DNA of 64,000 nucleotides from the IMG/VR virus record IMGVR_UViG_3300042540_001399, positions 186,001-250,000 of that record. One strand, given 5' to 3'. The position numbers were made by a program, and so were the translations under genes. The notes beneath the pieces are model-generated. The model did not search any database and was not told where the DNA came from. It was given only the letters and a program-made list of their open reading frames with translations. This document shows, one piece after another, positions 35,915 through 56,329 of the stretch (position 1 is its first letter; the number at the start of each line of letters is the position of its first letter).

Positions 35915-35986
35915 GCTCTGTAAGCATTGTTGGAGATGCGCCTGACTTGTAATCAGGAGAAATCAGTTCGATTCTGGTACGGAGCT
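35915..35986 (+). tRNA. tRNA-Thr(TGT)
   Basis: GCTCTGT/ACGGAGC; CCTGA-CTTGTAA-TCAGG; TTCGA. Confidence 0.9.
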
Positions 35987-35993
35987 CAAAAAG

Positions 35994-36002
35994 GTTCTTT
36001 GA
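35994..36002 (+). promoter_or_regulatory. boxA-like antitermination motif
   Basis: GTTCTTTGA; also at 39507, 39981 and 53468, all in RNA-gene leaders. Confidence 0.55.
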
Positions 36003-36019
36003 CATATTGGTCTTTATAG

Positions 36020-36090
36020 TGTTCCCTCGTCTAATGGCAGGACACGCGGTTTTGGTCCGTGGAATTGGGGTTCGAGTCCCTGGGGAACAA
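36020..36090 (+). tRNA. tRNA-Gln(TTG)
   Basis: TGTTCCC/GGGAACA; CGCGG-TTTTGGT-CCGTG. Confidence 0.92.
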
Positions 36091-36096
36091 CAATAA

Positions 36097-36180
36097 GGAA
36101 GAGTAATCACAACGGCTTGTGACTCCGTCTTGAAAACGGCAGGTACTGAAAGGTATGGGGATCGACACCTCACTCTTCCT
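36097..36180 (+). tRNA. tRNA-Ser(TGA)
   Basis: GGAAGAG/CTCTTCC; loop CTTGAAA; long variable arm; T loop ATCGACA. Confidence 0.88.
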
Positions 36181-36189
36181 CAACAATAA

Positions 36190-36262
36190 CTAGGTGTAGC
36201 TCAGATGGTAGAGCGGGTGGTTTGGGACCATCAGGCCGCAGGTTCGATCCCTGTCACTTAGA
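36190..36262 (+). tRNA. tRNA-Pro(TGG)
   Basis: CTAGGTG/CACTTAG; GGTGG-TTTGGGA-CCATC. Confidence 0.93.
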
Positions 36263-36266
36263 CAAC

Positions 36267-36342
36267 GTCTTCGTAGCTCAGTTGGTTTTAGAGCACCTCA
36301 CTTTTAATGAGGGGGTCACAGGTTCGAGCCCTGTCGGGGACA
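36267..36342 (+). tRNA. tRNA-Lys(TTT)
   Basis: GTCTTCG/CGGGGAC; CCTCA-CTTTTAA-TGAGG. Confidence 0.95.
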
Positions 36343-36384
36343 CAAAAATTTAGTAAAACTGAGCGATTTATACCAAAAAATGGT

Positions 36385-36392
36385 TATATTTG
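36385..36392 (+). promoter_or_regulatory. internal Bacteroidota -7 promoter element
   Basis: TATATTTG 17 nt before tRNA-Val. Confidence 0.6.
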
Positions 36393-36409
36393 CGTAAATA
36401 AACTAAAAA

Positions 36410-36483
36410 ACACTCTTAGCTCAGATGGTAGTAGCGGTTGTCTTACATACAACAGGTCACAGGTTCGATCCCTGTAGGGTGTA
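36410..36483 (+). tRNA. tRNA-Val(TAC)
   Basis: ACACTCT/AGGGTGT; GTTGT-CTTACAT-ACAAC. Confidence 0.92.
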
Positions 36484-36489
36484 CAATAA

Positions 36490-36575
36490 GGGAGAGTTGA
36501 GCAATTGGTTGGCTCAGCAGACTGTAAATCTGTCGTCGTAAGACCTTGGGGGTTCGAGTCCCTCCTCTCCCACCA
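36490..36575 (+). tRNA. tRNA-Tyr(GTA)
   Basis: GGGAGAG/CTCTCCC-A-CCA; loop CTGTAAA; variable arm. Confidence 0.95.
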
Positions 36576-36581
36576 CAAAAA

Positions 36582-36654
36582 GGACAAGTAGCTCAATTGG
36601 TAGAGCACCGCACTGTTAATGCGGGGGTTACAGGATCGTACCCTGTCTTGTCCG
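36582..36654 (+). tRNA. tRNA-Asn(GTT)
   Basis: GGACAAG/CTTGTCC; loop CTGTTAA; T loop ATCGTAC. Confidence 0.92.
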
Positions 36655-36660
36655 CAATAA

Positions 36661-36733
36661 GTTCACGTAGCTCAATTGGTAGAGCGCCGATCTGATACGT
36701 CGGAGGTAATGGGATCGTAACCCGTCGTGAACA
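36661..36733 (+). tRNA. tRNA-Ile(GAT)
   Basis: GTTCACG/CGTGAAC; loop CTGATAC; T loop ATCGTAA. Confidence 0.92.
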
Positions 36734-36737
36734 CTAC

Positions 36738-36821
36738 GGAAGATAAACCTTGATGGCGATAGGGTCCGCCTGCTAAGCGAGATGTACCTTTGGGTATTTG
36801 GTTCGATTCCAATGTCTTCCG
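36738..36821 (+). tRNA. tRNA-Ser(GCT)
   Basis: GGAAGA/TCTTCC; loop CTGCTAA; variable arm. Confidence 0.88.
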
Positions 36822-36827
36822 CAAAAC

Positions 36828-36897
36828 GCCGATAGGAAAGGTTTCCGATCCGGGCTCATATCCTGGATGTCATTGGGTTCGATACCCTTTATCGGTA
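36828..36897 (+). tRNA. atypical tRNA(CAT), probable elongator Met with shrunken D arm
   Basis: GCCGATA/TATCGGT; CCGGG-CTCATAT-CCTGG; D region only GGAA-AGGT-TTCC. Confidence 0.7.
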
Positions 36898-36903
36898 CTA
36901 CAT

Positions 36904-36977
36904 GGTGTATGTAGCTCAGTTGGCAGAGTGCTTGATTGTGGTTCAAGAGGTCATGGGTTCGACCCCCATCATACACA
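36904..36977 (+). tRNA. tRNA-His(GTG)
   Basis: encoded G-1, GTGTATG/CATACAC; loop TTGTGGT. Confidence 0.93.
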
Positions 36978-36978
36978 C

Positions 36979-37075
36979 AAATAGTTCACAACGGACAAGG
37001 CTTAGGCTCAAAGTGTGAGGTTATAATTCCTTATATTCCCTGAGGTGGGTGGCGAGTGGTTGACCAGAACTATTT
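36979..37075 (+). ncRNA. candidate structured RNA A
   Basis: 9-bp closing stem AAATAGTTC/GAACTATTT; no ORF. Confidence 0.45.
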
Positions 37076-37077
37076 AT

Positions 37078-37149
37078 ACCTTCGTAGCTTAATGGAAAAG
37101 CCTCAGAATACGAATCTGATGATTGGGAGTTCGACCCTCTCCGAAGGTA
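37078..37149 (+). tRNA. tRNA-Arg(ACG)
   Basis: ACCTTCG/CGAAGGT; TCAGA-ATACGAA-TCTGA. Confidence 0.92.
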
Positions 37150-37150
37150 C

Positions 37151-37283
37151 AAAAGATGATAGGAAGCGTAGAACAACGGACACGGAGGGGTGTTCGCAAG
37201 GGTACACACTAAGAATATATTTCTCTCTAAGGGTGTGTGAAGTCATACGATGGGATTCCTGATAAAGTTGTTCATCATCTTTT
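37151..37283 (+). ncRNA. candidate structured RNA B
   Basis: AAAAGATGAT/ATCATCTTTT and GAACAAC/GTTGTTC stems, internal hairpins. Confidence 0.55.
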
Positions 37284-37287
37284 ATTT

Positions 37288-37359
37288 ACCCCTTTCGTAT
37301 AATGGAAGTACAACACTCTTCTAAGGTGTCAGGTTGGAGTTCGAATCTCTGAGGGGGTA
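37288..37359 (+). tRNA. tRNA-Arg(TCT)
   Basis: ACCCCTT/AGGGGGT; ACACT-CTTCTAA-GGTGT. Confidence 0.9.
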
Positions 37360-37370
37360 CAACAAAATAC

Positions 37371-37441
37371 GCGTCTCTGGTGTAATGGTAGCATGATGGA
37401 TTCCAAACCCATCGGTCAGGGTTCGAGCCCTTGGGGACGCG
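37371..37441 (+). tRNA. tRNA-Trp(CCA)
   Basis: GCGTCTC/GGGACGC; ATGGA-TTCCAAA-CCCAT. Confidence 0.88.
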
Positions 37442-37449
37442 CTAATTAA

Positions 37450-37522
37450 GGACAGGTAGCTCAGTTGGTAGAGCGTTGGACTGAAGATCCAAGCGTCGGG
37501 GGTTCAATTCCCTCCCTGTCCA
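37450..37522 (+). tRNA. tRNA-Phe(GAA)
   Basis: GGACAGG/CCTGTCC; TTGGA-CTGAAGA-TCCAA. Confidence 0.95.
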
Positions 37523-37568
37523 CAAAATAAAATTTGTAATTTCTAACAAAAACCATTATCTTTGTATA

Positions 37569-38063
37569 ATGAAACATTTACCATACGAAGCTACAGGAAA
37601 GGCAATTAAGGGATATTCTGAATCAGAAACCGCTAGACGTGAAACAAATGACTGTGTGGTTAGAGCATTTGCATCGTCATTTGAAGTGTCTTATGATTAT
37701 GCCCATAAGTTTGTTGCGGATGAATTTGGTAGAAGACCAAGAAAAGGAACTTACGGAACTGTATCAAAACTTGTCAAAATGGCCGACAGTTTATTTAAAG
37801 TTAATGGTAAAAAAGTTTGTCCTGTTGGTATTAGACACAACGATAATATGTTAAGATCTTTGATGTATGATGTTAAAGTGAAAGGGGAAATTAAAAAAAG
37901 AAATATGACTGTTGGGACATTTGTTAAACAAAATCCAAAAGGAACTTTTTTTGTTTTGGTTAGACGACACGCATTTACAATCAAAGATGGTGTTGTAATT
38001 GGTAATTGGGATGACGCTATAAAAACAAAAAGACCAATGAGATGTGCCTTCAGAATTAAATAA
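37569..38063 (+). CDS. phage protein with NDCVVRA...HAF.I.DG motif (possible Cys-His-Asp peptidase fold)
   Basis: TATCTTTG -7 element at 37557-37564; Cys, His and Asp motif residues. Confidence 0.65.
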   Translation: MKHLPYEATGKAIKGYSESETARRETNDCVVRAFASSFEVSYDYAHKFVADEFGRRPRKGTYGTVSKLVKMADSLFKVNGKKVCPVGIRHNDNMLRSLMYDVKVKGEIKKRNMTVGTFVKQNPKGTFFVLVRRHAFTIKDGVVIGNWDDAIKTKRPMRCAFRIK

Positions 38064-38075
38064 AAAAATAAAAAA

Positions 38076-38531
38076 ATGAACCGTGTATTTAGAACGGTGG
38101 AAGGGGTTTCTATACCTGATATTGTAAAACATACTATTGATATTCTTAAAGAATGTCCATATGCTGAAATACACATTGGTACAGACTCACAAAACCATAG
38201 AAGATCAACCGTGTATGTTACGGCAATAGCATATAGATATGGTAACCGTGGGGTTCACTACATTTATCATAAACAAAAAATTAAAAAAATTCGTGATAAG
38301 TGGACAAGATTATGGAATGAAGCTGATTATTCGATCGAAGTTGCAAATTGGTTGACAAATAAAATAAAGGTTCAAGTTGAAATAGACCTTGATTACAATT
38401 ATCAAGAAAAGTACTTCAGTTCGAAGTTAGTTGGTCCAGCGGTTGGGTGGGTACAATCGTTAGGTTATAAGGCAAATATAAAACCAAATAATCAAATTGC
38501 AACAAGAGCGGCAGACCACCACTGTCGTTAA
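38076..38531 (+). CDS. RNase H-like YkuK family protein
   Basis: IGTDSQ, RLWNEA, DLDYN, IKP...AADH. Confidence 0.8.
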   Translation: MNRVFRTVEGVSIPDIVKHTIDILKECPYAEIHIGTDSQNHRRSTVYVTAIAYRYGNRGVHYIYHKQKIKKIRDKWTRLWNEADYSIEVANWLTNKIKVQVEIDLDYNYQEKYFSSKLVGPAVGWVQSLGYKANIKPNNQIATRAADHHCR

Positions 38532-38533
38532 TT

Positions 38534-38605
38534 GGTCGGGTGTCTGATGGGTAAAGTCTCGGTCTGCAAAACCGTAGTATGTGGGTTCGAATCCCACCCC
38601 GACCT
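38534..38605 (+). tRNA. tRNA-Cys(GCA)
   Basis: GGTCGGG/CCCGACC, U73; loop CTGCAAA. Confidence 0.9.
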
Positions 38606-38614
38606 CAACAAAAT

Positions 38615-38688
38615 GCCCCTATGGCGGAATTGGTATACGCGTGTGACTTAGGATCACAATCTTGCAGGTTCGAGTCCTGCTGGGGGTA
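38615..38688 (+). tRNA. tRNA-Leu(TAG), short variable loop
   Basis: GCCCCTA/TGGGGGT; TGTGA-CTTAGGA-TCACA; variable region ATCTT. Confidence 0.9.
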
Positions 38689-38727
38689 CAAATATTTTTA
38701 TTAGTATATTTATACTAAAAGATTATT

Positions 38728-39318
38728 ATGAAAAAGATTATAAGACTTACTGAATCAGATCTCGCTCGTATAGTTGGACGAGTTATTAAAGAAGAATATG
38801 ATGAAGATGATGAAGTGGAGGTTACACCTGAAATGATTATCAAAATGCTTATGGATAGTGCCGAATCAACCCCACAAGAAAATTATGATGACCTATATGA
38901 TTGGATGCAAGATGTATTTTCACCGGTTGAAAGTGAACTTGAGGATATGGGGTATGATATTGACGACCTTCGTATGACATATGATGATGTTATAATGAGT
39001 TTATGGGATGATAATGATGAAGATGATGAGGAATCATTATATGAATCAGATCTCGCTCGTATCGTTAAACAAGTTATTAGTGAATCTAAAAAGAATCTTA
39101 GTAAATCTGAAATATTGAAGATGTCAAAAGATGAGCTAAAAGATGTTTATGGTGAATTGGAAGTAAAAGGTGAGTATCACGGAAACAAAGGAACATTCCA
39201 CCACTTCAAAAGAACTGCAATCGGAGATATTGTCTGTAGTTTTAGAACTGATGACTCAACACCATCAGGATTGAAAAGAAATACTCAAGGAATTAAAGTC
39301 AAAAATTTAGATTTTTAA
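38728..39318 (+). CDS. protein with two LxESDL motifs
   Basis: MKKIIRLTESDLARIV and internal LYESDLARIV; ATATTTAT 38706-38713. Confidence 0.8.
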   Translation: MKKIIRLTESDLARIVGRVIKEEYDEDDEVEVTPEMIIKMLMDSAESTPQENYDDLYDWMQDVFSPVESELEDMGYDIDDLRMTYDDVIMSLWDDNDEDDEESLYESDLARIVKQVISESKKNLSKSEILKMSKDELKDVYGELEVKGEYHGNKGTFHHFKRTAIGDIVCSFRTDDSTPSGLKRNTQGIKVKNLDF

Positions 39319-39324
39319 TAAAAC

Positions 39325-39356
39325 TTGACACTTTTGAAATTATTAGTATATTTATA
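39325..39356 (+). promoter_or_regulatory. promoter upstream of leader 2
   Basis: TTGACA 39325-39330 and TATATTTATA 39347-39356. Confidence 0.6.
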
Positions 39357-39377
39357 AAACAAATTAAAAAACCGCAA

Positions 39378-39446
39378 ATGAAAAATTTACACATATTATT
39401 GATAGGGGGCGATTTAGCTGAAGCAACTTTCAAGAAGAGGGTGTAA
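39378..39446 (+). CDS. attenuator leader peptide 2 (22 aa)
   Basis: MKNLHILLIGGDLAEATFKKRV; codons match tRNA array 2. Confidence 0.85.
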   Translation: MKNLHILLIGGDLAEATFKKRV

Positions 39447-39469
39447 TATTTTATACATTTAATATTTAG

Positions 39470-39504
39470 AACCCCTCTTCCAAAAAAGAGGGGTTTTTTG
39501 TTTT
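39470..39504 (+). terminator. attenuator terminator 2
   Basis: AACCCCTCTT/AAGAGGGGTT plus T tract; boxA-like motif and tRNA-Leu follow. Confidence 0.9.
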
Positions 39505-39530
39505 AGGTTCTTTGAAATAATGGTAATAAT

Positions 39531-39615
39531 GGTTCGGTGGTGGAATTGGCAATACACGACAGGTTTAAGCCCTGTTTCCCATTGAGGATTGTGGGTTCGA
39601 GTCCCACCCGGACTA
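39531..39615 (+). tRNA. tRNA-Leu(TAA)
   Basis: GGTTCGG/CCGGACT; ACAGG-TTTAAGC-CCTGT; variable arm. Confidence 0.93.
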
Positions 39616-39620
39616 CAACA

Positions 39621-39716
39621 AAAACACATAAACTTTGGTTCCCACACAGCGGTGAGACGGGGTAAGTTATATACAATTTCTCGGGGCTGGAAGTAGAAAG
39701 CCAAAGAATGTGTTTT
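39621..39716 (+). ncRNA. candidate rod-like structured RNA C (6S-like?)
   Basis: AAAACACAT/ATGTGTTTT, CTTTGGTT/AGCCAAAG, CAGC/GCTG, GAGA/TCTC nested stems. Confidence 0.55.
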
Positions 39717-39777
39717 TTTAAAAAAAACTTTACAAAGTATTTGGTAGAACAAAATAAAAAATTTAATTTTGTAATAA

Positions 39778-39894
39778 ATGAAGACAATTGAAGTTACATA
39801 TCAAGAAATCAAAATGGCAACAAGGCCAAATGTGTATAAAAATAAAAAAAAATACACAAGAAAAGAAAAACATAAAAAAGATTTGGTAGATTAA
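39778..39894 (+). CDS. small basic protein, ArfA-like motif (38 aa)
   Basis: MKTIEVTYQEIKMATRPNVYKNKKKYTRKEKHKKDLVD; TAATTTTG at 39764-39771. Confidence 0.6.
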   Translation: MKTIEVTYQEIKMATRPNVYKNKKKYTRKEKHKKDLVD

Positions 39895-39905
39895 AAAAAA
39901 TCTTA

Positions 39906-39989
39906 TATCTTTGTTAAACAAATGACGGGGGTAGGAAAATTAGTGTTGTGGATTCCTACTCCCGTGTAAAAGGGAAGAAAGTTCTTTGA
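39906..39989 (+). promoter_or_regulatory. -7 promoter, 13-bp hairpin and boxA-like motif (rrn-leader-like)
   Basis: TATCTTTG 39906-39913; ACGGGGGTAGGAA/TTCCTACTCCCGT 39925-39965; GTTCTTTGA 39981-39989. Confidence 0.6.
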
Positions 39990-40000
39990 TTTAAAATATT

Positions 40001-40081
40001 GTGGTTGTAAGCAATGGGAAACTCGTTAAGTACATCAACCAGTTGGCTCAAGATGGTGAAACGAGAGTGTGAGTCAACTAC
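40001..40081 (+). ncRNA. candidate structured RNA D
   Basis: GTGGTTG/CAACTAC, CTCGTT/AACGAG, CATC/GATG nested stems. Confidence 0.45.
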
Positions 40082-40103
40082 TAAATCACAAAAAAAATGA
40101 AAT

Positions 40104-40228
40104 AGGCAAGTGGCGGAATTTATGGCAGACGCTTAGGTTGATTCCCCGTAAGAAGTCACCGAGATATAGCTGGGGATGTCTCTTGAAAAGGGAACTATAT
40201 CGTACAGGTTCGAATCCTGTTTTGCCTA
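40104..40228 (+). ncRNA. tRNA-like RNA with expanded anticodon/variable region and pseudoknot
   Basis: AGGCAAG/TTTGCCT acceptor, Leu-type D arm, ACAGG-TTCGAAT-CCTGT T arm, ~70-nt insert. Confidence 0.75.
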
Positions 40229-40233
40229 CACAT

Positions 40234-40306
40234 CGCGGGATGTGGAAGATGGTTATCCGCTCGGTCTCATAAGCCGAGATCGCCGGTTCGAGTCCGGCTC
40301 CCGCAA
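40234..40306 (+). tRNA. initiator tRNA-fMet(CAT)
   Basis: C1:A72 mismatch, CGCGGGA/TCCCGCA; loop CTCATAA. Confidence 0.9.
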
Positions 40307-40311
40307 CTTAA

Positions 40312-40371
40312 AGGGTGGATAGGTGGAAGGGCCTTTCCTGAAAGACGGTTTACTAGGCCCGTGTCCACCCT
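40312..40371 (+). ncRNA. candidate small structured RNA E
   Basis: AGGGTGGATA/TGTCCACCCT and GGGCCT/AGGCCC stems. Confidence 0.45.
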
Positions 40372-40382
40372 ACTGAATTTAT

Positions 40383-40463
40383 GCTGACGTACCAGTGGAT
40401 GCTTATATCATCTATACCTGTAGCGGTAAGTTGAAAACGTTGGTTCGAATCCAACCGTCAGTA
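40383..40463 (+). tRNA. D-armless tRNA-like RNA with TAT anticodon-like loop
   Basis: GCTGACG/CGTCAGT; GGATG-CTTATAT-CATCT; GTTGG-TTCGAAT-CCAAC; 7-nt D replacement. Confidence 0.6.
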
Positions 40464-40466
40464 CGG

Positions 40467-40610
40467 GAGTGTATGCAGTAGAGATCTGCTTATGATGGTA
40501 GGGACAAACACTTTAAAAAAGGGTCCCAAAGAGATAAGCCGTTTAGTAGTTTTGGTCGATAAAAACTAACGGATTTTATAGTAATGGTTCACCGATCGAA
40601 ACCAATACTC
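40467..40610 (+). ncRNA. candidate multibranched RNA F
   Basis: GAGTGT/ATACTC closing stem with four internal hairpins. Confidence 0.5.
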
Positions 40611-40681
40611 ATGATGTCAGAAAGGTTGATCACCTAATTCATGTAAACACCGTGACAACACCCCAAAGTTGTCACACTTTT

Positions 40682-40757
40682 GCGGGAGTAGCTCAATTGG
40701 TAGAGTTCCAGCCTTCCAAGCTGGCTGTTGAGGGTTCGAATCCCTTCTCCCGCTCCA
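40682..40757 (+). tRNA. tRNA-Gly(TCC)
   Basis: GCGGGAG/CTCCCGC-T-CCA; loop CTTCCAA. Confidence 0.95.
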
Positions 40758-40761
40758 AGTT

Positions 40762-40834
40762 GGGCCTGATGCCGACGGCAGGTCGAGTGGTTTGCAACCA
40801 CATCGTTTGGGTTCGATTCCCACAGTGTCCACCA
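40762..40834 (+). tRNA. atypical tRNA-Ala(TGC)
   Basis: G3:U70, A73, encoded CCA; GTGG-TTTGCAA-CCAC; bulged acceptor stem. Confidence 0.75.
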
Positions 40835-41007
40835 AATAAACAAAAAAACAAAGTAGTGATGAAGGAAGTTTTGTCAGGAACTTTAAAATCAAGAAAAGTT
40901 AATTTTGTTCAGATTGAAAATAACAGTGATTTTTTAAGTTCTTTAAGAAAAAAAATAAAAAAAAGAATAAGTAATTTAAAAAAAACAATTAAATTTGTAA
41001 AAAAAAG

Positions 41008-41087
41008 AAGATGAGTTTCCCTACATCCCGGATTAGTGAGAAACTTAAAGAGGGACAAAAGTGGTACACAAGTCCACGACTCATCTT
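41008..41087 (+). ncRNA. candidate structured RNA G
   Basis: AAGATGAGT/ACTCATCTT closing stem, two hairpins; TAAATTTG at 40990-40997. Confidence 0.45.
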
Positions 41088-41092
41088 AATTT

Positions 41093-41164
41093 GGTCGGTT
41101 CATCTAGGGGTCAGGATACAAGGTTTTCATCCTTGTCACACGGGTTCGAATCCCGTACCGACTA
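41093..41164 (+). tRNA. tRNA-Glu(TTC)
   Basis: GGTCGGT/ACCGACT; CAAGG-TTTTCAT-CCTTG. Confidence 0.93.
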
Positions 41165-41189
41165 CAAACCTGTCAAGGTAGTACAGGAA

Positions 41190-41305
41190 GGTCAGGAGTG
41201 TAATGAGGCACGGTGCCAAGTCCTAAAGACACCACGGTCCAAGAGCAATTTGGACGCGAGAAGTTATAAGGTTGCTCATTGTAGGTTCGAATCCTACCCT
41301 GACTT
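41190..41305 (+). ncRNA. tRNA-like RNA: acceptor plus T arm with novel 84-nt body
   Basis: GGTCAGG/CCTGACT; GTAGG-TTCGAAT-CCTAC; AATGAG/CTCATT and GTCCAA/TTGGAC stems. Confidence 0.7.
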
Positions 41306-41307
41306 CA

Positions 41308-41455
41308 CGGTTCGGATCATCACCGAATAGTATGCCCAATACGATGAGAAATGAGGTGATACCTCATATGGGACTTCTGATAGATAAAGGATCTATTCGG
41401 TTTGACTAACCGCGGGAAATATCAAAGAGGGTTGAAGAACTACGTACCCTCGAGT
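41308..41455 (+). ncRNA. candidate multi-hairpin RNA H
   Basis: CCGAATAG/CTATTCGG, ATGAGG/CCTCAT, CGGTT/AACCG, GAGGG/CCCTC. Confidence 0.4.
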
Positions 41456-41461
41456 CCAATT

Positions 41462-41536
41462 GGTCCATTGGTGTAGTGGCTAACATTCATCCCTGTCACG
41501 GATGAGCCGCGAGTTCGATTCTCGCATGGACCGCCA
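41462..41536 (+). tRNA. tRNA-Asp(GTC)
   Basis: GGTCCAT/ATGGACC-G-CCA; CATCC-CTGTCAC-GGATG. Confidence 0.95.
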
Positions 41537-41558
41537 AACTTATTAAAAATTAACCATT

Positions 41559-41828
41559 ATGAAAACTTTTCAAGACTTGGAATTTATAAAAATAAATGAT
41601 GCACCGTTTATGGTTGGTAAAAAATCCCGTATGCATTTTGATAATGGGTTCGGTGTATCTGTTGTATCACACTCTTATTCATATGGGGGTCGTGATGGTC
41701 TTTATGAAGTCGCGGTCCTTGACTCTGACGACAATCTTACCTACGATACTCCAATAACCAATGATGTAATGGGTTACTTAACTGAACAAGATGTTACTAA
41801 TGTCATGAAACAAGTTCAAGAGCTATAA
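41559..41828 (+). CDS. hypothetical phage protein
   Basis: 89 aa; FDNGFGVSVV...GGRDGLYEVAVL. Confidence 0.75.
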   Translation: MKTFQDLEFIKINDAPFMVGKKSRMHFDNGFGVSVVSHSYSYGGRDGLYEVAVLDSDDNLTYDTPITNDVMGYLTEQDVTNVMKQVQEL

Positions 41829-41913
41829 AAGATGACAGTTTTTTTATTCATAACATTTTTAACGACACTTTTTTTGTTGAGAAAAAAAAGAAAGTTTTAA
41901 GTAGATAAAAAAA

Positions 41914-41987
41914 GGTCTCTTAGCTCATTAGGTTAGAGCAACTGACTCATAATCAGTAGGTGGTTGGTTCGATCCCAACAGGGACCA
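41914..41987 (+). tRNA. tRNA(CAT), Ile2 (lysidine)-type
   Basis: GGTCTCT/AGGGACC; GACTCATAATC anticodon arm as in bacterial tRNA-Ile2 (recalled, not searched). Confidence 0.8.
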
Positions 41988-42032
41988 CAAAAGTATTGAA
42001 TATTTTAAAACAGAAATTATTATTTATAATAT

Positions 42033-42106
42033 GCACCCGTAGCTCAGCTGGATAGAGCAACTGCCTTCTAAGCAGTAGGTCAATGGTTCGAATCCATTCG
42101 GGTGTA
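42033..42106 (+). tRNA. tRNA-Arg(TCT), second copy
   Basis: GCACCCG/CGGGTGT; ACTGC-CTTCTAA-GCAGT. Confidence 0.95.
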
Positions 42107-42178
42107 CTTTTTTTTTATTTTTTTTTTGGAAATCAAAAAGTTTCCTGTATCTTTGTTGAAATAAATAACGATAAAGAT

Positions 42179-43726: not shown

Positions 43727-43791
43727 AATATATTTTTTTTTATAAATATAAAGTTTTTCAAAAAGTAAATAGTTTGATAATATTTATTAAT

Positions 43792-45549
43792 ATGTCAAAA
43801 TTGTCTAAAGTATCTTTTTTTATTTCGATAGTGATTATGTCAATTTATTTTGTGACACAATCTTTACTTGTGACAGGAAACATAAGTTATAGTAAAAATA
43901 TCGGTTATGCTGGATATATATGTTTTTTACTTTTTGTATCTTTTTTTGGGATTTACATTTATGAATATTTGAAAAAAAACAAAAAAATAAAAAAAAGAAG
44001 TGATTACGTTAAAAAATTAAATGAAACATTAATATATCAATCATTAAATTCTTCTTTTTTCGAAGGTAACACGTCAGAAGGCGCTAAAGTTCTAACTAAA
44101 GAAGTCAGTAATTCAATCAATGCTGACAGATGCTCAGTTTGGTTGTACAATACAGACAGAACTTCAATTATTTGTCAACAATTGTATTCCAAAAAAACTG
44201 ACAGCTGGGAACAAAATTATGAATTATTAAAAGAAGATTATAAACCTTATTTTTTATCTCTTTTATTAAATCCTATCATAGTTGCAAATGATGCAAGAAA
44301 TCATAGTGCAACATCATGTTTTAAAGACACTTATCTTGACCCATTGGGTATTAAATCTATGCTTGATGTTCCCATTTCCTACAAGGGAGACACTATTGGG
44401 GTAATATGTATTGAAAATTTTGATTTTAGAATTTGGGACCAAGTTGAAATTGATTTTGCTCAAATGTTATCAGCATTATATTCATTTGCATATTCAATAA
44501 AAGAAAATAATAATGTTAATAAGACAATTGATGATATTGAAGGATTTATAGATCATTCGGTATTAGTAAGTAAAACGGATTCTAAGGGTAAGATAGTTTA
44601 TGTGAATAAAAAGTTTGAAGATGTTTCTGGTTGGAAACTTAGTCAGGTAATAGGAAAAGATCATAACATTGTTAATTCAGGAAAACATACCAAAAATTTT
44701 TGGAAAGACATGTATAAAACAACAGTAGAAAAAAGAAAGATTTGGAACCAAATAGTTACAAATAAAACAAAAAAAGGTGAACTTTATTGGGTTGATTCTT
44801 ATATAATGGCAGAATTTGACGAACAAGATTGTTTAAAAGGGTTTATGTCTATAAGGTATGATGTTACAGATTTGATAAAAAAAACTGAAGAAATAGCGAA
44901 GAAAAATGTTTATTTGGAACATGCCGCAAAAATATTAAGACATGATATGCATTCAGGAATTAATACTTACATACCAAGAGGGATAAGTTCGTTAGAAAGA
45001 AGATTGAGTGATAACCAAATTCAAGAATATAAATTGGAAGCCCCTTTGAAAATGTTGAAAGAAGGTCTCAAACACGCTCAGAAAGTTTATAAAGGTGTTT
45101 ATGAATTTACTAATTTAGTAAAAAAAGATTCAGTGCTCAACAAAACTAAAGTAAACTTAAAAGAAATATTAGAAAGTTACCTATCAACAACATCATATAA
45201 ATCACAAGTTGTAATTGATACTTTAGAAGACCATGAAGTTAATGAACCTTTATTTTGTACCGCCATCGATAATTTAATTAGAAATGGCCTCAAATATAAT
45301 GACAATGATAACAAATTTGTACATTTATATATGGAAGATTTTCAGTTGGTAATTCAGGATAATGGAAGGGGGCTGTCACAAGAAGAATTTGACAATTTAT
45401 CGAAACCATACGTAAGAAAAGAAAACCAAAAAGAAAGTGGTAGTGGTTTAGGTTTAAATATATGTTTAGCAATACTCAAAGAACACGGATTCAGCGTTTC
45501 TTGTGAAAAAAACCATATAGGCACTAAAATTAAAATTAAATTCAAATGA
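43792..45549 (+). CDS. sensor histidine kinase (2 TM, GAF, PAS/PAC, HisKA, HATPase)
   Basis: H box RHDMH, N box NLIRNGLKYN, G1 QDNGRG, G2 GSGLGL; PAC KTKKGELYWV. Confidence 0.92.
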   Translation: MSKLSKVSFFISIVIMSIYFVTQSLLVTGNISYSKNIGYAGYICFLLFVSFFGIYIYEYLKKNKKIKKRSDYVKKLNETLIYQSLNSSFFEGNTSEGAKVLTKEVSNSINADRCSVWLYNTDRTSIICQQLYSKKTDSWEQNYELLKEDYKPYFLSLLLNPIIVANDARNHSATSCFKDTYLDPLGIKSMLDVPISYKGDTIGVICIENFDFRIWDQVEIDFAQMLSALYSFAYSIKENNNVNKTIDDIEGFIDHSVLVSKTDSKGKIVYVNKKFEDVSGWKLSQVIGKDHNIVNSGKHTKNFWKDMYKTTVEKRKIWNQIVTNKTKKGELYWVDSYIMAEFDEQDCLKGFMSIRYDVTDLIKKTEEIAKKNVYLEHAAKILRHDMHSGINTYIPRGISSLERRLSDNQIQEYKLEAPLKMLKEGLKHAQKVYKGVYEFTNLVKKDSVLNKTKVNLKEILESYLSTTSYKSQVVIDTLEDHEVNEPLFCTAIDNLIRNGLKYNDNDNKFVHLYMEDFQLVIQDNGRGLSQEEFDNLSKPYVRKENQKESGSGLGLNICLAILKEHGFSVSCEKNHIGTKIKIKFK

Positions 45550-53479: not shown

Positions 53480-54376
53480 ATAGATTATCCGTTCAGGAAA
53501 AGTTTTGTCAGATTCTATGACAAGTAATTGGAATGAAATTTCCATCTTTGAATGATAAAGATATTGGGCCGTGTATAGTCCATAAAATAAACTACGAAAG
53601 TAGGATAAAGTGAACCCTTAAGTGTGTTGGGTTTGCGGCTTCTTCGGGAGCTTGAGTACACAAGCGGGATACCATTTTGGCTTTAGTATTGAGGGCAACG
53701 CTGTAAAGAATAAGGCAAAATGATTTGGCGATGTGGGTCGTCTGATTGAGGTGGGAACACCAATAGGAATAACCCGTAGGAATATTGCAAGACTCAAAGT
53801 CATCCAACTTTAATATTGCGTTTTCCAATATAATAGGTTACTTAAAACCAAGTGGAAGGACCACAAGGTAAGATGTAGAACGAGTGGTGTCGCTAACATC
53901 CTTCACTCAGGTTTACCAAAACCCGGTGATGAAGTAGTCTAAAAATATGGAGGTAGGGATATCTCACGGAGTAGTTGAGTATCGACTCGTTCAAAAGATG
54001 GGTTGGCTCGGTTGGCGGACCACTACTTCGACAATCCACGACACAAAACTTATGACTATTGAATTAAGTCCATTAATTAATACATTAAGGAAAAGTGTCC
54101 GTCAGGTTTGGATGAAAGGTGACTACATAGTAATGAGCCGTTCATTGCACACAGAGATCCCAAGTCGATGTGTAATTATCCGAAAAACCTTTAGTCCCGC
54201 AAGGACGAGTTGGGAAGGCATTCTCGAAAAGAGTAGATTAGGATGAGAGTAATTCAAACCTTAAGGAGTGGTAAACCTAAAAGACCGTCACTGAGAAATA
54301 CTTCTCAAAAGGAAGTGGATAAGAGTAGAAACAATAATGACTCTAAAGGTTCTCACACAAACGTGTAATCTCAGCG
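53480..54376 (+). ncRNA. large ornate ncRNA, GOLLD-like
   Basis: ~0.9 kb, visibly GC-richer than flanks, many GNRA/UUCG-type hairpins, CTGAGA/TCTCAG terminal stem, own promoter and terminator. Confidence 0.7.
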
Positions 54377-54410
54377 TTTTATTTTAATGGAGCCACCGGT
54401 AAAGAACATT

Positions 54411-55938: not shown

Positions 55939-56329
55939 TGGTGGAGGCGGAGGGACTCGAACCCTCGTCCATAATATCCTGTCAGATAAGGACTACATGT
56001 TTAGGTTGATATTTTCTAATATCCCAAAATAGTTGATTTGTTCTTCACCATCGTAAATCAACAACCAATGGTCCCGAATCGGATTTAGAGAGCCATCCGG
56101 TGTGCTCTATCAAACTACGACTTCTGTTGCTAGGTTATATGTCTGCCGACCCCCCGTTTCCGTAAACTTCTTAAGCTACAGTAACTTCAGAACCTCTTAC
56201 TAATCCAAGAGTTTCCATTTTGTTTAGCACATTGCCAGTTGTTTTCTAAGTCAGTTTTTAAAGAGATTAACTCAGTCCCTACATGCCCTTATTCTTCAGC
56301 CAATACCTGTCAAATCCAAAAACGCCCCC
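55939..56329 (-). ncRNA. ssrA: tmRNA
   Basis: 5' GGGGGCG...GGATTTGACAGG; 3' GGACGAGGGTTCGAGTCCCTCCGCCTCCACCA; G3:U70; tag ORF 56236-56171. Confidence 0.95.

What the first reader, a model, noticed from the sequence alone, without database searches (positions are those of the whole stretch)
40104..40228. tRNA-shaped RNA whose anticodon loop is locked in a pseudoknot with an enlarged variable arm
Seen: intact 7-bp acceptor, Leu/Ser-type D arm (GCG...CGC) and perfect T arm. The anticodon-position hairpin GGT(T)GATT/AGTCACC has a 10-nt loop. A 7-bp arm GATATAG/CTATATC carries a GAAA-capped sub-hairpin, and TGGGGA (40171-40176) is complementary to loop TCCCCG (40143-40148). Inference: a non-decoding tRNA mimic, such as a decoy for anticodon nucleases, synthetases or uncharged-tRNA sensors.
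Basis: partly seen in the sequence, partly recalled or inferred. Interest (0 to 1): 0.75.

Follow-up and report, generated by a model that had tools for sequence, protein, structure and literature searches.

The report
Anticodon-less tRNA-Leu mimic in phage
A jumbo lake phage carries a strongly conserved gene for a tRNA-shaped RNA that keeps everything the leucine-charging enzyme needs but has its anticodon arm replaced by a knotted module, and it belongs to a large, apparently undescribed class of such RNAs in phages.

Summary
The element at 40104-40228 (+) is real. It has the acceptor stem, Leu-type D arm, T arm and discriminator A of a bacterial tRNA-Leu, and Rfam's tRNA model matches it end to end at 27.2 bits with a 62-nt insertion. 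Seven distinct variants from related lake phages are 95% identical. The 71-nt middle (96%) is better conserved than the frame (94%) or the flanks (64-71%). Compensatory changes support the acceptor stem and the TCCCCG/TGGGGA loop-loop helix. There is no canonical anticodon stem-loop, and no contiguous deletion yields a consistent tRNA-Leu. More than 110 viral contigs carry the same frame with unrelated, often pseudoknotted middles. Most of those examined lie outside tRNA arrays, and one phage has four tandem copies. My best reading is a non-decoding tRNA mimic that LeuRS can probably charge, most likely acting as a decoy or adaptor. The function is inferred, not shown. I found no description of this class in the literature I could search, nor a matching Rfam family.

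The parts
40104..40110 (+). Acceptor stem, 5' strand (AGGCAAG)
   Evidence: Pairs with 40221-40227. Pairs 3:70 and 4:69 change on both sides among the 7 variants.
40111..40132 (+). U8, G9 and a tRNA-Leu-type D arm: 3-bp stem GCG/CGC, with a loop containing A14, A15, GG and A20a
   Evidence: Matches the Rfam tRNA model. The stem is invariant. The same D-arm sequence is shared by the whole class. LeuRS determinants are as listed in PMC9976931.
40133..40138 (+). 5' strand of the stem at the anticodon-stem position (T30, Y31, bulged A32, G33, G34, T35)
   Evidence: Pairs with 40158-40162. Pair 31:58 is U.G in 4 variants and C-G in 3. All cells are paired.
40139..40157 (+). Expanded 19-nt loop in place of the 7-nt anticodon loop. 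It contains the 5' strand of the loop-loop helix and the invariant purine-rich stretch GTAAGAAGT.
   Evidence: Columns 36, 37 and 54 at the loop mouth vary freely and do not pair. The rest of the loop is invariant.
40143..40148 (+). Loop-loop (pseudoknot) helix, 5' strand TCCCCG
   Evidence: Pairs with 40171-40176. Pair 42:71 is C-G in 6 variants and U-A in the L003 lineage. 100% of cells are paired.
40158..40162 (+). 3' strand of the anticodon-position stem (ACCGA)
40163..40169 (+). Enlarged variable-arm hairpin, 5' strand GATATAG
   Evidence: Perfect 7-bp complement of 40195-40201, invariant in all variants. A hairpin flush with the T arm is enriched across the class: 24 of 84 at p<=0.05.
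40171..40176 (+). Loop-loop helix, 3' strand TGGGGA, lying inside the loop of the variable-arm hairpin
40179..40193 (+). Small hairpin: 4-bp stem TCTC/GRGA closing the 7-nt loop TTGAAAA, which has anticodon-loop format
   Evidence: Pair 78:88 is U.G in 6 variants and U-A in 1. Terminal pair 76:90 is broken in L003. ARAGORN uses it as a 'GAA anticodon' after in-silico deletions.
40195..40201 (+). Variable-arm hairpin, 3' strand CTATATC, followed by a 2-nt linker GT (the T can act as U48)
40204..40220 (+). T arm: ACAGG / TTCGAAT / CCTGT
40221..40228 (+). Acceptor stem 3' strand (TTTGCCT) and discriminator A73. CCA is not encoded; CAC follows.
   Evidence: A73 occurs in 68 of 85 class members.

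Best explanation
The element is a gene for a stable, non-decoding tRNA mimic derived from tRNA-Leu.

Shown:
- It sits in the phage's single tRNA array, on the same strand, with no promoter-like site directly upstream.
- It keeps the acceptor stem, Leu-type D arm, T arm and discriminator A.
- Its anticodon arm is replaced. A 5-bp stem carries a 19-nt loop, and six bases of that loop pair with the loop of an enlarged variable-arm hairpin.
- The whole 71-nt middle is under stronger purifying selection than the frame.

Inferred:
- It is cut out of the array transcript by RNase P and 3' processing, and receives CCA from the host enzyme. CCA is not encoded, and the phage has no CCA-adding enzyme.
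- It can be leucylated by the host LeuRS. Every determinant known for E. coli-type LeuRS is present (A73, U8:A14, A15:U48, G18G19, A20a, T-loop U54/U55/C56/A58), and that enzyme needs neither the anticodon nor the variable arm.
- With no accessible anticodon it cannot decode on the ribosome and cannot be cut by nucleases that attack the anticodon loop.

Most likely role, and the weakest step: it acts in trans as a mimic of tRNA-Leu, or of Leu-tRNA-Leu. It would occupy or divert a host factor that reads the tRNA body or its charged end, probably a tRNA-directed defence or toxin activity. The knotted middle would be the specificity module. This fits the class pattern of a constant scaffold with a variable module.
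For: - Frame: the Rfam tRNA model matches full length. Class relatives score 31-41 bits, above threshold.
- Conservation: element 95% mean pairwise identity, middle 96%, frame 94%, flanks 64-71%.
- Structure: compensatory changes in the acceptor stem and the loop-loop helix. The revised model has 99.6% of cells paired and accounts for all 7 variable columns.
- No canonical anticodon arm. In-silico deletions give no consistent Leu tRNA. Intron-aware ARAGORN calls only 12 of 54 class members Leu, with a scatter of other isotypes.
- LeuRS determinants: PMC9976931 states that A73 is crucial for E. coli leucine identity but the anticodon and long variable arm are not, and that variants lacking both arms stay active. 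All the listed determinants can be read directly in the sequence.
- Same architecture with strong covariation in a second subfamily: 14 of 29 pairs compensatory.
- Class pattern: more than 110 viral contigs; A73 in 68 of 85; 60 of 85 not within 300 nt of another tRNA.
- Solitary copies sit in early replication/recombination modules containing SSB, ERF and an SNF2 helicase.
- Four tandem paralogs with one frame and four different middles in one phage.
- The phage has its own decoding tRNA-Leu(UAA), tRNA-Leu(UAG) and tRNA-Phe(GAA), so it needs no further decoder for these.
- It also has an RNA ligase, which fits a conflict over tRNAs.
Against: - No transcript evidence. RNA-run contigs cover only the conserved frame ends, and depth over the insert is 0-3.6.
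- Aminoacylation, processing and CCA addition are all inferred. The host, and so its LeuRS type, is unknown.
- The loop-loop helix rests on one compensatory event in one lineage. The 7-bp arm and the small hairpin are invariant, so they are unproven by covariation.
- No partner protein is encoded alongside: the commonest neighbour family is in only 10 of 84 loci.
- The phage lacks LeuRS, SmpB, Leu/Phe-transferase and RtcB.
- A decoy has to compete with abundant host tRNA-Leu.
- The small hairpin's loop TTGAAAA has perfect anticodon-loop format, which leaves open some anticodon-related function.
- The complex-prediction job was not folded and gives no evidence either way.
Confidence: 0.5

Rival explanations
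1. Scaffolded effector RNA. The tRNA frame serves only for processing and stability, as a natural tRNA scaffold. The conserved knotted middle is the active part: an aptamer, sponge or protein-binding module. Aminoacylation would be irrelevant.
For: The middle is the best-conserved part (96%). Paralogs share one frame with different middles. Middles are unrelated between subfamilies (46 subfamilies among 82 distinct middles). No antisense target is needed for such a role.
Against: Leu-specific features that a mere scaffold does not need are kept. A73 is present in 68 of 85 members although the search pattern did not require it. The A15:U48 and A20a positions are also kept. No Rfam aptamer or ribozyme matches any of the middles tested. 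No complementary target above chance exists in the phage genome.
Confidence: 0.2
2. Processing punctuation. A tRNA-like structure whose only job is to direct RNase P and RNase Z cleavage of a polycistronic transcript, as with tRNA punctuation or mascRNA-type 3'-end formation.
For: Neighbouring ORFs of solitary class members are nearly all on the same strand. There is no promoter-like site directly upstream of the element. The acceptor and T arms are intact.
Against: In this phage the neighbours are themselves tRNAs, which already provide cleavage sites. RNase P needs neither the Leu-type D loop, nor A73, nor a 96%-conserved 71-nt middle.
Confidence: 0.08
3. An unusual decoding tRNA. Either the insert is removed by an unknown endonuclease plus the phage RNA ligase, or the small hairpin with loop TTGAAAA serves as the anticodon stem-loop (GAA, Phe) on top of the 7-bp arm.
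For: In-silico deletion of about 44-46 nt gives an ARAGORN 'tRNA-Phe(GAA)' in both the window copy and L003. The loop has Y32-U33-NNN-R37 format and is invariant. The phage encodes an Rnl2-family ligase. Some bacterial tRNA-Leu-frame genes have intron-like expansions of the anticodon loop.
Against: The deletion product has a 2-bp D stem and a 3-4-bp anticodon stem, which is broken further in L003. The part that would be removed is the most conserved part. A small-hairpin-plus-arm limb of 11 bp plus a junction is about twice the normal anticodon arm. The phage already has tRNA-Phe(GAA). Other class members have no such hairpin: only 2 of 82 have a 7-nt loop on a stem after the D arm. The insert is far too short for a group I intron, and Rfam finds no intron family.
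Confidence: 0.07
4. Decaying tRNA-Leu pseudogene, or a chance resemblance.
For: Default ARAGORN does not call it. The Rfam score is just under threshold. The single-sequence fold is no better than shuffles.
Against: It is 95% conserved across 7 variants while flanks are 64-71%. There are compensatory changes. It belongs to a large class with the same frame.
Confidence: 0.02
5. A miniature tmRNA-like rescue or tagging RNA. It would be charged, enter stalled ribosomes without codon reading, and the middle would supply a short template.
For: Same logic as tmRNA: a synthetase that ignores the anticodon, a tRNA-like domain and pseudoknots. A short frame GCT GGG GAT GTC TCT TGA can be read at 40169-40186.
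Against: There is no SmpB in the phage. The phage already has a full tmRNA at 55939-56329. Rfam tmRNA models do not match the element. The D arm is intact, unlike tmRNA. The reading frame is a post-hoc observation with no support from other subfamilies.
Confidence: 0.03

Closest known systems
Bacterial and phage tRNA-Leu (class II tRNA, Rfam RF00005)
   Same: Acceptor stem, U8, 3-bp D stem with the GGCGGAAT...GACGC sequence, GG in the D loop, TTCGAAT T loop and discriminator A73. It lies in a tRNA array, and CCA is added after transcription.
   Different: There is no 5-bp stem with a 7-nt anticodon loop and no U33-anticodon in a normal context. The middle is 71 nt instead of about 33, and the loop is tied to the variable arm. 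It scores under the Rfam threshold and is not called by default ARAGORN.
Minimalist tRNA-Leu substrates of E. coli LeuRS (Larkin et al. 2002, as summarised in PMC9976931)
   Same: tRNA-Leu bodies without the anticodon arm and variable arm are still leucylated, provided A73 and the D/T-loop tertiary contacts are kept. The element keeps exactly those features.
   Different: Those are laboratory constructs. This is a natural, conserved gene with a new module in place of the deleted arms. The review notes that the anticodon arm is needed for LeuRS editing, so proofreading of this RNA may differ.
tmRNA (Rfam RF00023)
   Same: A tRNA-derived RNA charged by a synthetase that ignores the anticodon. 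It is non-decoding, and pseudoknots replace the anticodon limb. Phages also encode it, including this one.
   Different: tmRNA has Ala identity (G3.U70), no D stem, a length of 260-400 nt, a tag reading frame and an SmpB partner. None of these apply here.
Phage T4 stable RNAs rnaC and rnaD (species 1 and 2)
   Same: Small stable RNAs of unknown function encoded inside a phage tRNA cluster. rnaC has a tRNA-like T arm and acceptor.
   Different: No sequence similarity, no Leu-type frame and different sizes. This is a conceptual analogue only.
Aminoacylatable tRNA-like structures of plant RNA viruses (for example the TYMV TLS)
   Same: Viral tRNA mimics that use pseudoknots and are recognised by tRNA enzymes (from my own knowledge).
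   Different: Those are 3'-terminal cis elements of RNA genomes, with the pseudoknot in the acceptor arm. This is a free-standing gene in a DNA phage, with a normal acceptor stem and the knot in the anticodon/variable region.
Phage tRNAs that evade anticodon nucleases (PMC10264068, PMC11464382, PMC11555353)
   Same: Phage-encoded tRNA-type genes in arrays whose anticodon region departs from the host's, in the context of tRNA-directed defence.
   Different: Those remain decoding tRNAs with point changes in the loop. Here the anticodon arm is replaced altogether.

Membership tests
tRNA (RF00005), canonical decoding tRNA | 7-bp acceptor stem, D arm, and T arm with a T-psi-C-type loop | tested here: met
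tRNA (RF00005), canonical decoding tRNA | 5-bp anticodon stem closing a 7-nt loop with U33 and an anticodon at positions 34-36 | tested here: not met
   The stem at that position closes a 19-nt loop. Infernal places a 62-nt insertion there.
tRNA (RF00005), canonical decoding tRNA | Score at or above Rfam's gathering threshold (29 bits) | tested here: not met
   27.2 bits. Other class members reach 31-41 bits.
tRNA-Leu identity (E. coli-type LeuRS substrate) | A73, U8:A14, A15:U48, G18G19, A20a and the T-loop U54:A58/U55/C56 | tested here: met
   All can be read in the sequence against the list in PMC9976931. Actual charging was not tested.
tRNA-Leu identity (E. coli-type LeuRS substrate) | Leucylation by LeuRS | not testable with these tools
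   The complex-prediction job was not folded. This needs an aminoacylation assay.
Intron-containing tRNA (group I intron in tRNA-Leu, or short intron at 37/38) | Removing one contiguous insert restores a normal cloverleaf with a Leu anticodon, consistently in homologs | tested here: not met
   Exhaustive in-silico deletions give one weak Leu product in the window copy and different ones in L003. The only recurrent product is a poor 'Phe(GAA)'.
Intron-containing tRNA (group I intron in tRNA-Leu, or short intron at 37/38) | Group I catalytic core (typically >200 nt; Rfam Intron_gpI) | tested here: not met
   The excess sequence is only about 40-50 nt, and there is no Rfam intron match at E<=10.
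tmRNA (RF00023 and clan) | Match to tmRNA models, G3.U70, a tag reading frame and an SmpB partner | tested here: not met
   No tmRNA-family hit on the element. Pair 3:70 is G-C or A-U. There is no SmpB in the genome.
T4 rnaC/rnaD | Sequence or structural homology to T4 species 1 or 2 RNA | tested here: not met
   Different frame. rnaC matches only weakly, to the tRNA-Sec model.
Proposed class: tRNA-Leu frame with a replaced anticodon arm | GGCGGAAT...GACGC D arm, 7-bp acceptor stem, canonical T arm, 45-75 nt in between, and no canonical anticodon stem-loop | tested here: met
Proposed class: tRNA-Leu frame with a replaced anticodon arm | The loop of the anticodon-position hairpin pairs with the variable region next to the T arm | tested here: inconclusive
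   Met in the candidate (1 compensatory pair) and in subfamily A2. Seen by eye in the L055 type, L297 and 41190-41305. A uniform test across the class was weak: 10 of 84 at p<=0.05.

The most novel reading that the evidence does not exclude
The element belongs to a large, undescribed superfamily of anticodon-less RNAs that LeuRS can charge. They combine a constant tRNA-Leu scaffold with interchangeable knotted recognition modules. The superfamily would have evolved from tRNA-Leu in the way tmRNA evolved from tRNA-Ala. Phages would deploy these RNAs, singly in early operons or as tandem repertoires in jumbo phages, as programmable mimics or adaptors that target different host tRNA-directed factors, or that carry leucine to non-ribosomal acceptors.
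Probability: 0.3. Interest if true: 0.85.

Novelty: new variant of a known kind. Interest (0 to 1): 0.68.

Why it matters
Phage tRNA genes are now understood partly as weapons in a conflict over host tRNA-cleaving defences. A conserved phage RNA that keeps the parts of tRNA-Leu read by processing enzymes and LeuRS, but discards the anticodon, would be a different strategy from supplying replacement tRNAs.

It is invisible to default tRNA finders (1 of 85 called) and matches no Rfam family of its own. Standard annotation therefore leaves these genes as blank intergenic DNA or as odd 'tRNA' calls.

The constant-scaffold, variable-module pattern makes a testable prediction: each module should have its own binding partner. 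It also gives a natural example of the tRNA-scaffold principle used in RNA engineering.

Tried and rejected
- **Splicing to a normal tRNA.** I deleted every contiguous segment of 8-69 nt in the window copy and in L003 and ran ARAGORN on the products. There was no consistent Leu product.
- **ARAGORN's 'tRNA-Pro(tgg) with a 38-nt intron'**. It needs a mispaired D stem, so I rejected it.
- **CTYAGGT after the D arm as a Leu anticodon loop.** No flanking stem exists, and column 31 is explained instead by pairing with G58.
- **U-AAG-R as a shared Leu(AAG) anticodon motif.** Not enriched: 13 of 46 subfamilies against 9.1 expected, p about 0.11.
- **Antisense target in the phage genome.** Nothing above chance.
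- **Known aptamer or ribozyme in the middles.** No Rfam match.
- **Dedicated neighbouring protein.** None is universal.
- **Phage-encoded LeuRS, CCA-adding enzyme, SmpB, Leu/Phe-transferase or RtcB.** All absent.
- **Transcript evidence.** Four metatranscriptome runs were inconclusive for this element.
- **LeuRS-RNA complex prediction.** The job was not folded and is not evidence.
- **More diverged members of the candidate's own subfamily.** Five further pattern scans of viral contigs and one of metagenomes found only 7 distinct variants. A covariance-model search of three other jumbo phages found class members but none with the same middle.
- **Named phage genomes.** No close relative of the phage and no match to a class element.
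- **Literature.** Five full-text searches and three papers read found no description of this class.

Full report
**Setting.** The window is bases 186001-250000 of a 290,887-bp IMG/VR virus record estimated at 99% complete, so this is a jumbo phage. It is found in lake-water metagenomes. All 22 ARAGORN tRNAs of the genome lie in one array on the + strand, at window 35915-42107. The window also holds a GOLLD RNA and a tmRNA. The finding lies inside the array, 5 nt upstream of a tRNA-Met.

**The observation.**
- a 7-bp acceptor stem (40104-40110 / 40221-40227) followed by discriminator A;
- a 3-bp GCG/CGC D stem;
- a perfect T arm with loop TTCGAAT;
- a 7-bp GATATAG/CTATATC arm;
- TCCCCG complementary to TGGGGA.

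Rfam's tRNA model aligns to exactly 40104-40228 over its full length at 27.2 bits (threshold 29, E = 0.004), with a 62-nt insertion in the anticodon/variable region. Default ARAGORN misses it. On its own, the sequence is not convincing. Its minimum free energy is no better than shuffles (z = -0.45), and a loop-loop match of this strength appears in about a fifth of shuffles. The 5' part (GTGGCGGAAT...GACGC) is the characteristic D arm of bacterial tRNA-Leu.

**Homologs and selection.** Pattern scans of viral and metagenome contigs recovered 7 distinct variants of this element.

| Region | Mean pairwise identity |
|---|---|
| Whole element | 95% |
| 71-nt middle | 96% |
| tRNA frame | 94% |
| Upstream 150 nt | 69% |
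| Next tRNA position downstream | 71% |
| Further downstream | 64% |

The insert is therefore the most strongly constrained part of the neighbourhood. That excludes a decaying pseudogene, and it argues against an intron that is simply discarded.

**Secondary structure.**
- The acceptor stem has two pairs that change on both sides.
- The loop-loop helix 40143-40148 / 40171-40176 has one such pair: C-G in six variants, U-A in the L003 lineage.

A second, more diverse subfamily (see below) suggested a revised stem starting directly after the D stem: T30-A59, Y31-G58, a bulged A32, then G33-C57, G34-C56 and T35-A59's neighbour T35-A55. It closes a 19-nt loop. In this model 99.6% of cells pair, against 34-50% when partners are slid. 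All seven variable columns are explained:
- column 31 is U.G or C-G;
- columns 36, 37 and 54 are unpaired at the loop mouth;
- columns 42 and 71 covary;
- column 88 turns U.G into U-A in the small hairpin;
- column 76 is that hairpin's terminal pair.

The 7-bp arm and the small hairpin are essentially invariant, so covariation is silent on them. Five more scans and a covariance-model search found no more diverged members of this subfamily to test them.

The resulting layout is: D arm, then a 5-bp stem at the anticodon-stem position, then a 19-nt loop, then (with no linker) a 7-bp variable-arm hairpin. The loop of that hairpin holds the partner strand of the loop-loop helix and a 4-bp hairpin with loop TTGAAAA. 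A 2-nt linker then leads to the T arm.

**Is it spliced into a normal tRNA?** I deleted every contiguous segment of 8-69 nt from the window copy and from L003 and ran ARAGORN on all products.
- Leu products are rare and differ between the two copies.
- The only recurrent product is a 'tRNA-Phe(GAA)' that uses the small hairpin as its anticodon arm. It has a 2-bp D stem and a 3-4-bp anticodon stem, and it would discard the most conserved 46 nt.
- The excess sequence is far too short for a group I intron, and Rfam finds none.
- The phage already has tRNA-Leu(UAA), tRNA-Leu(UAG) and tRNA-Phe(GAA).

I rate a decoding role at well under 10%.

- 85 distinct elements have an acceptor stem of at least 6 bp and a 5-bp T stem.
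- 68 of the 85 have A73, which the pattern did not require.
- Many share an almost identical frame (AGTCAGG...CCTGACT plus A). Their 82 distinct middles, however, fall into 46 unrelated subfamilies.
- Default ARAGORN of the 85.
- Rfam sees them only as tRNA at 31-41 bits with a large insertion, and nothing known matches their middles.
- Only 2 of 82 have a 7-nt loop on a stem after the D arm. Intron-aware ARAGORN gives a scatter of isotypes.

A second subfamily of five sequences shows strong covariation: 14 of 29 pairs compensatory, and 95.8% of cells paired against 83% in shuffles. It supports a stem directly after the D stem, an internal hairpin, and a pseudoknot between that hairpin's loop and the variable region. 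I see the same theme by eye in the L055 type, in L297, and in a second element of this window at 41190-41305. A uniform automated test for one fixed topology was only weakly positive (10 of 84), whereas a hairpin flush with the T arm is clearly enriched (24 of 84 at p<=0.05).

**Genomic context of the class.**
- 60 of 85 elements are not within 300 nt of another tRNA.
- Solitary copies lie in replication/recombination modules with SSB, ERF and an SNF2 helicase, on the same strand as their neighbours. No protein family is a universal neighbour.
- One 246-kb phage has four copies within 2.3 kb, with an identical frame and four different middles of 87-120 nt total length.
- The same pattern also hits at least 120 GTDB genomes of many phyla. 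These are a mixture: assembly duplications, tRNA-Leu-frame genes with non-Leu anticodons and very long variable arms, genes with intron-like expansions of the anticodon loop, and phage-type elements.
- No deposited phage genome matches a class element.

**How it most likely works.** The review PMC9976931 states the following for E. coli:
- A73 is crucial for leucine identity, but the anticodon and the long variable arm are not.
- A15:U48, G18G19, A20a and the D/T-loop contacts are essential.
- tRNA-Leu variants lacking both the anticodon arm and the variable arm remain active.
- The anticodon arm is needed for LeuRS editing but not for aminoacylation.

Every one of these determinants is present in the element. 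So the parts that are kept are exactly those read by RNase P, the CCA-adding enzyme, LeuRS and probably EF-Tu. The part that is replaced is the one the ribosome and anticodon nucleases read.

I therefore commit to a non-decoding tRNA-Leu mimic that LeuRS can charge. It would be processed out of the array transcript: there is no promoter-like site directly upstream, CCA is not encoded, and the phage has no CCA-adding enzyme. Three class-level features fit an early-expressed counter-defence role best: the constant scaffold with a variable module, the tandem repertoires, and the location of solitary copies in early operons. In that role the RNA would occupy or divert a host factor that recognises the tRNA-Leu body or the charged 3' end. 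This last step is inference only.

The phage lacks LeuRS, SmpB, Leu/Phe-transferase and RtcB, but it does have an Rnl2-family RNA ligase.

**What could not be shown.**
- Metatranscriptome contigs cover only the conserved frame ends of the element (depth 0-3.6 over 40137-40203). The two other odd tRNA-like elements of the window, by contrast, do appear as short contigs in RNA libraries.
- The LeuRS-RNA complex job was not folded and is not evidence.
- The host is unknown.

**Comparison with known systems.** The element works like a tRNA-Leu body and resembles tmRNA in logic. It fails the defining tests for a canonical tRNA (anticodon arm, Rfam threshold), for tmRNA, and for intron-containing tRNAs. 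T4 rnaC and rnaD are a conceptual precedent: stable RNAs of unknown function in a phage tRNA cluster, but not homologous. A 2023 survey of structured RNAs in viruses mentions tRNA-like candidates only generically. I found no description of this class, and I cannot exclude one in literature outside the searched library.

**Verdict.** The feature is real, conserved and structurally unusual. The 'non-decoding mimic' reading is the best supported, and the specific function remains open. I classify it as a new variant of a known kind (tRNA-derived mimics). It gains interest because it is one member of a large class that standard tRNA finders do not detect.

Noticed in passing
window 41190-41305 (+): A second pseudoknotted tRNA-like element, 116 nt. 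It has acceptor GGTCAGG/CCTGACT and a canonical T arm. The hairpin GTCCAA[GAGCAAT]TTGGAC has a loop whose GAGCAA pairs with TTGCTC placed 3 nt before the T arm. RNA-library contigs start at 41191 (X16, X19).
   Followed up: partly
window 40383-40463 (+): An 81-nt tRNA-shaped element with acceptor GCTGACG/CGTCAGT plus A and a canonical T arm, but no normal D arm. It contains the hairpin TGGATG/CATCTA with a 7-nt loop CTTATAT (anticodon-loop format, UAU). Short contigs with no mismatches covering 40386-40463 and 40376-40464 occur in two RNA runs.
   Followed up: partly
window 38615-38689 (+): The phage's tRNA-Leu(UAG) has the Leu-type D arm and A73 but only a 4-nt variable region (75 nt in total). 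That makes it a class-I-shaped tRNA-Leu, which fits a host LeuRS that does not need the long variable arm.
   Followed up: no
window 36097-36181, 36738-36822, 36827-36898, 40762-40830 (+): Relaxed ARAGORN adds tRNA-Ser(TGA), tRNA-Ser(GCT), a third tRNA-Met(CAT) and a weak tRNA-Ala(TGC). The default run and Rfam's gathering threshold miss these, so the array may cover all 20 amino acids.
   Followed up: no
window 53967-54377 (+) and 55939-56329 (-): A full-length GOLLD RNA (320 bits) and a phage-encoded tmRNA (114 bits) lie 14-16 kb downstream of the tRNA array. No SmpB gene was found in the phage genome.
   Followed up: partly
G001 (record holding L044): 209138-209224, 209371-209482, 209639-209758, 211429-211519: Four tandem tRNA-like genes with an identical acceptor/T frame (AGTCAGG...CCTGACT) but four unrelated middles. 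Their lengths are 87, 112, 120 and 91 nt. This is a paralog repertoire on one scaffold.
   Followed up: partly
L061:1132-1264 (+): A 133-nt element with a perfect class-I tRNA frame (49 bits). Its anticodon stem continues into a long helix capped by a second T-arm-like hairpin (GAGAG TTCGAGT CTCTC) and a D-arm-like hairpin, giving a possible second elbow.
   Followed up: no
Genome-contig loci L172, L177, L202, L203, L237 (Gammaproteobacteria/Pseudomonadales MAGs); L152, L244, L254: Bacterial genes with a tRNA-Leu-type frame, A73 and an encoded or near-encoded CCA. They have an intact 7-nt anticodon loop, but it carries non-Leu anticodons (GGA, GGC, CGC, UGG), and the variable arms are about 30 nt. 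These are possible mistranslating or reassigned tRNAs.
   Followed up: no
Genome-contig loci L181, L182 (Planctomycetota), L205 (Obscuribacter), L175, L176, L178, L188, L232, L236: Chromosomal tRNA-Leu-frame genes with an intact anticodon stem and a normal variable arm, but with the anticodon loop expanded to 28-49 nt, often as an extended helix. In L181, L182 and L205, removing 21-26 nt after U33 would leave CT-CAA-AA.
   Followed up: no
class middles (46 subfamilies), including window 40152-40158: The heptamer RAAGTYA (GAAGTCA in the candidate) occurs in 6 of 46 unrelated subfamilies against 1.4 expected (2 of 2000 shuffles), but the choice was post hoc. In an unbiased k-mer test, ACCCA is the most enriched 5-mer (8 subfamilies against 1.2 expected).
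   Followed up: partly
G000:134962-135546 (+), outside the window (L149): An Rnl2-family RNA ligase gene (PF09414, 51 bits, 387-aa open frame) in the same phage. It fits RNA or tRNA repair.
   Followed up: no
window 39925-39965 (+): A long, nearly perfect hairpin (ACGGGGGTAGGAA...TTCCTACTCCCGT) in the 487-nt gap between tRNA-Leu(UAA) and the element. Its function is unknown.
   Followed up: no
window 43774-45549 (+): The phage encodes a 591-aa GAF-PAS-HATPase sensor histidine kinase just downstream of the tRNA array. A DUF458/RNaseH-like protein (38076-38531) sits inside the array, and a homolog recurs next to class elements in other contigs (L076).
   Followed up: no
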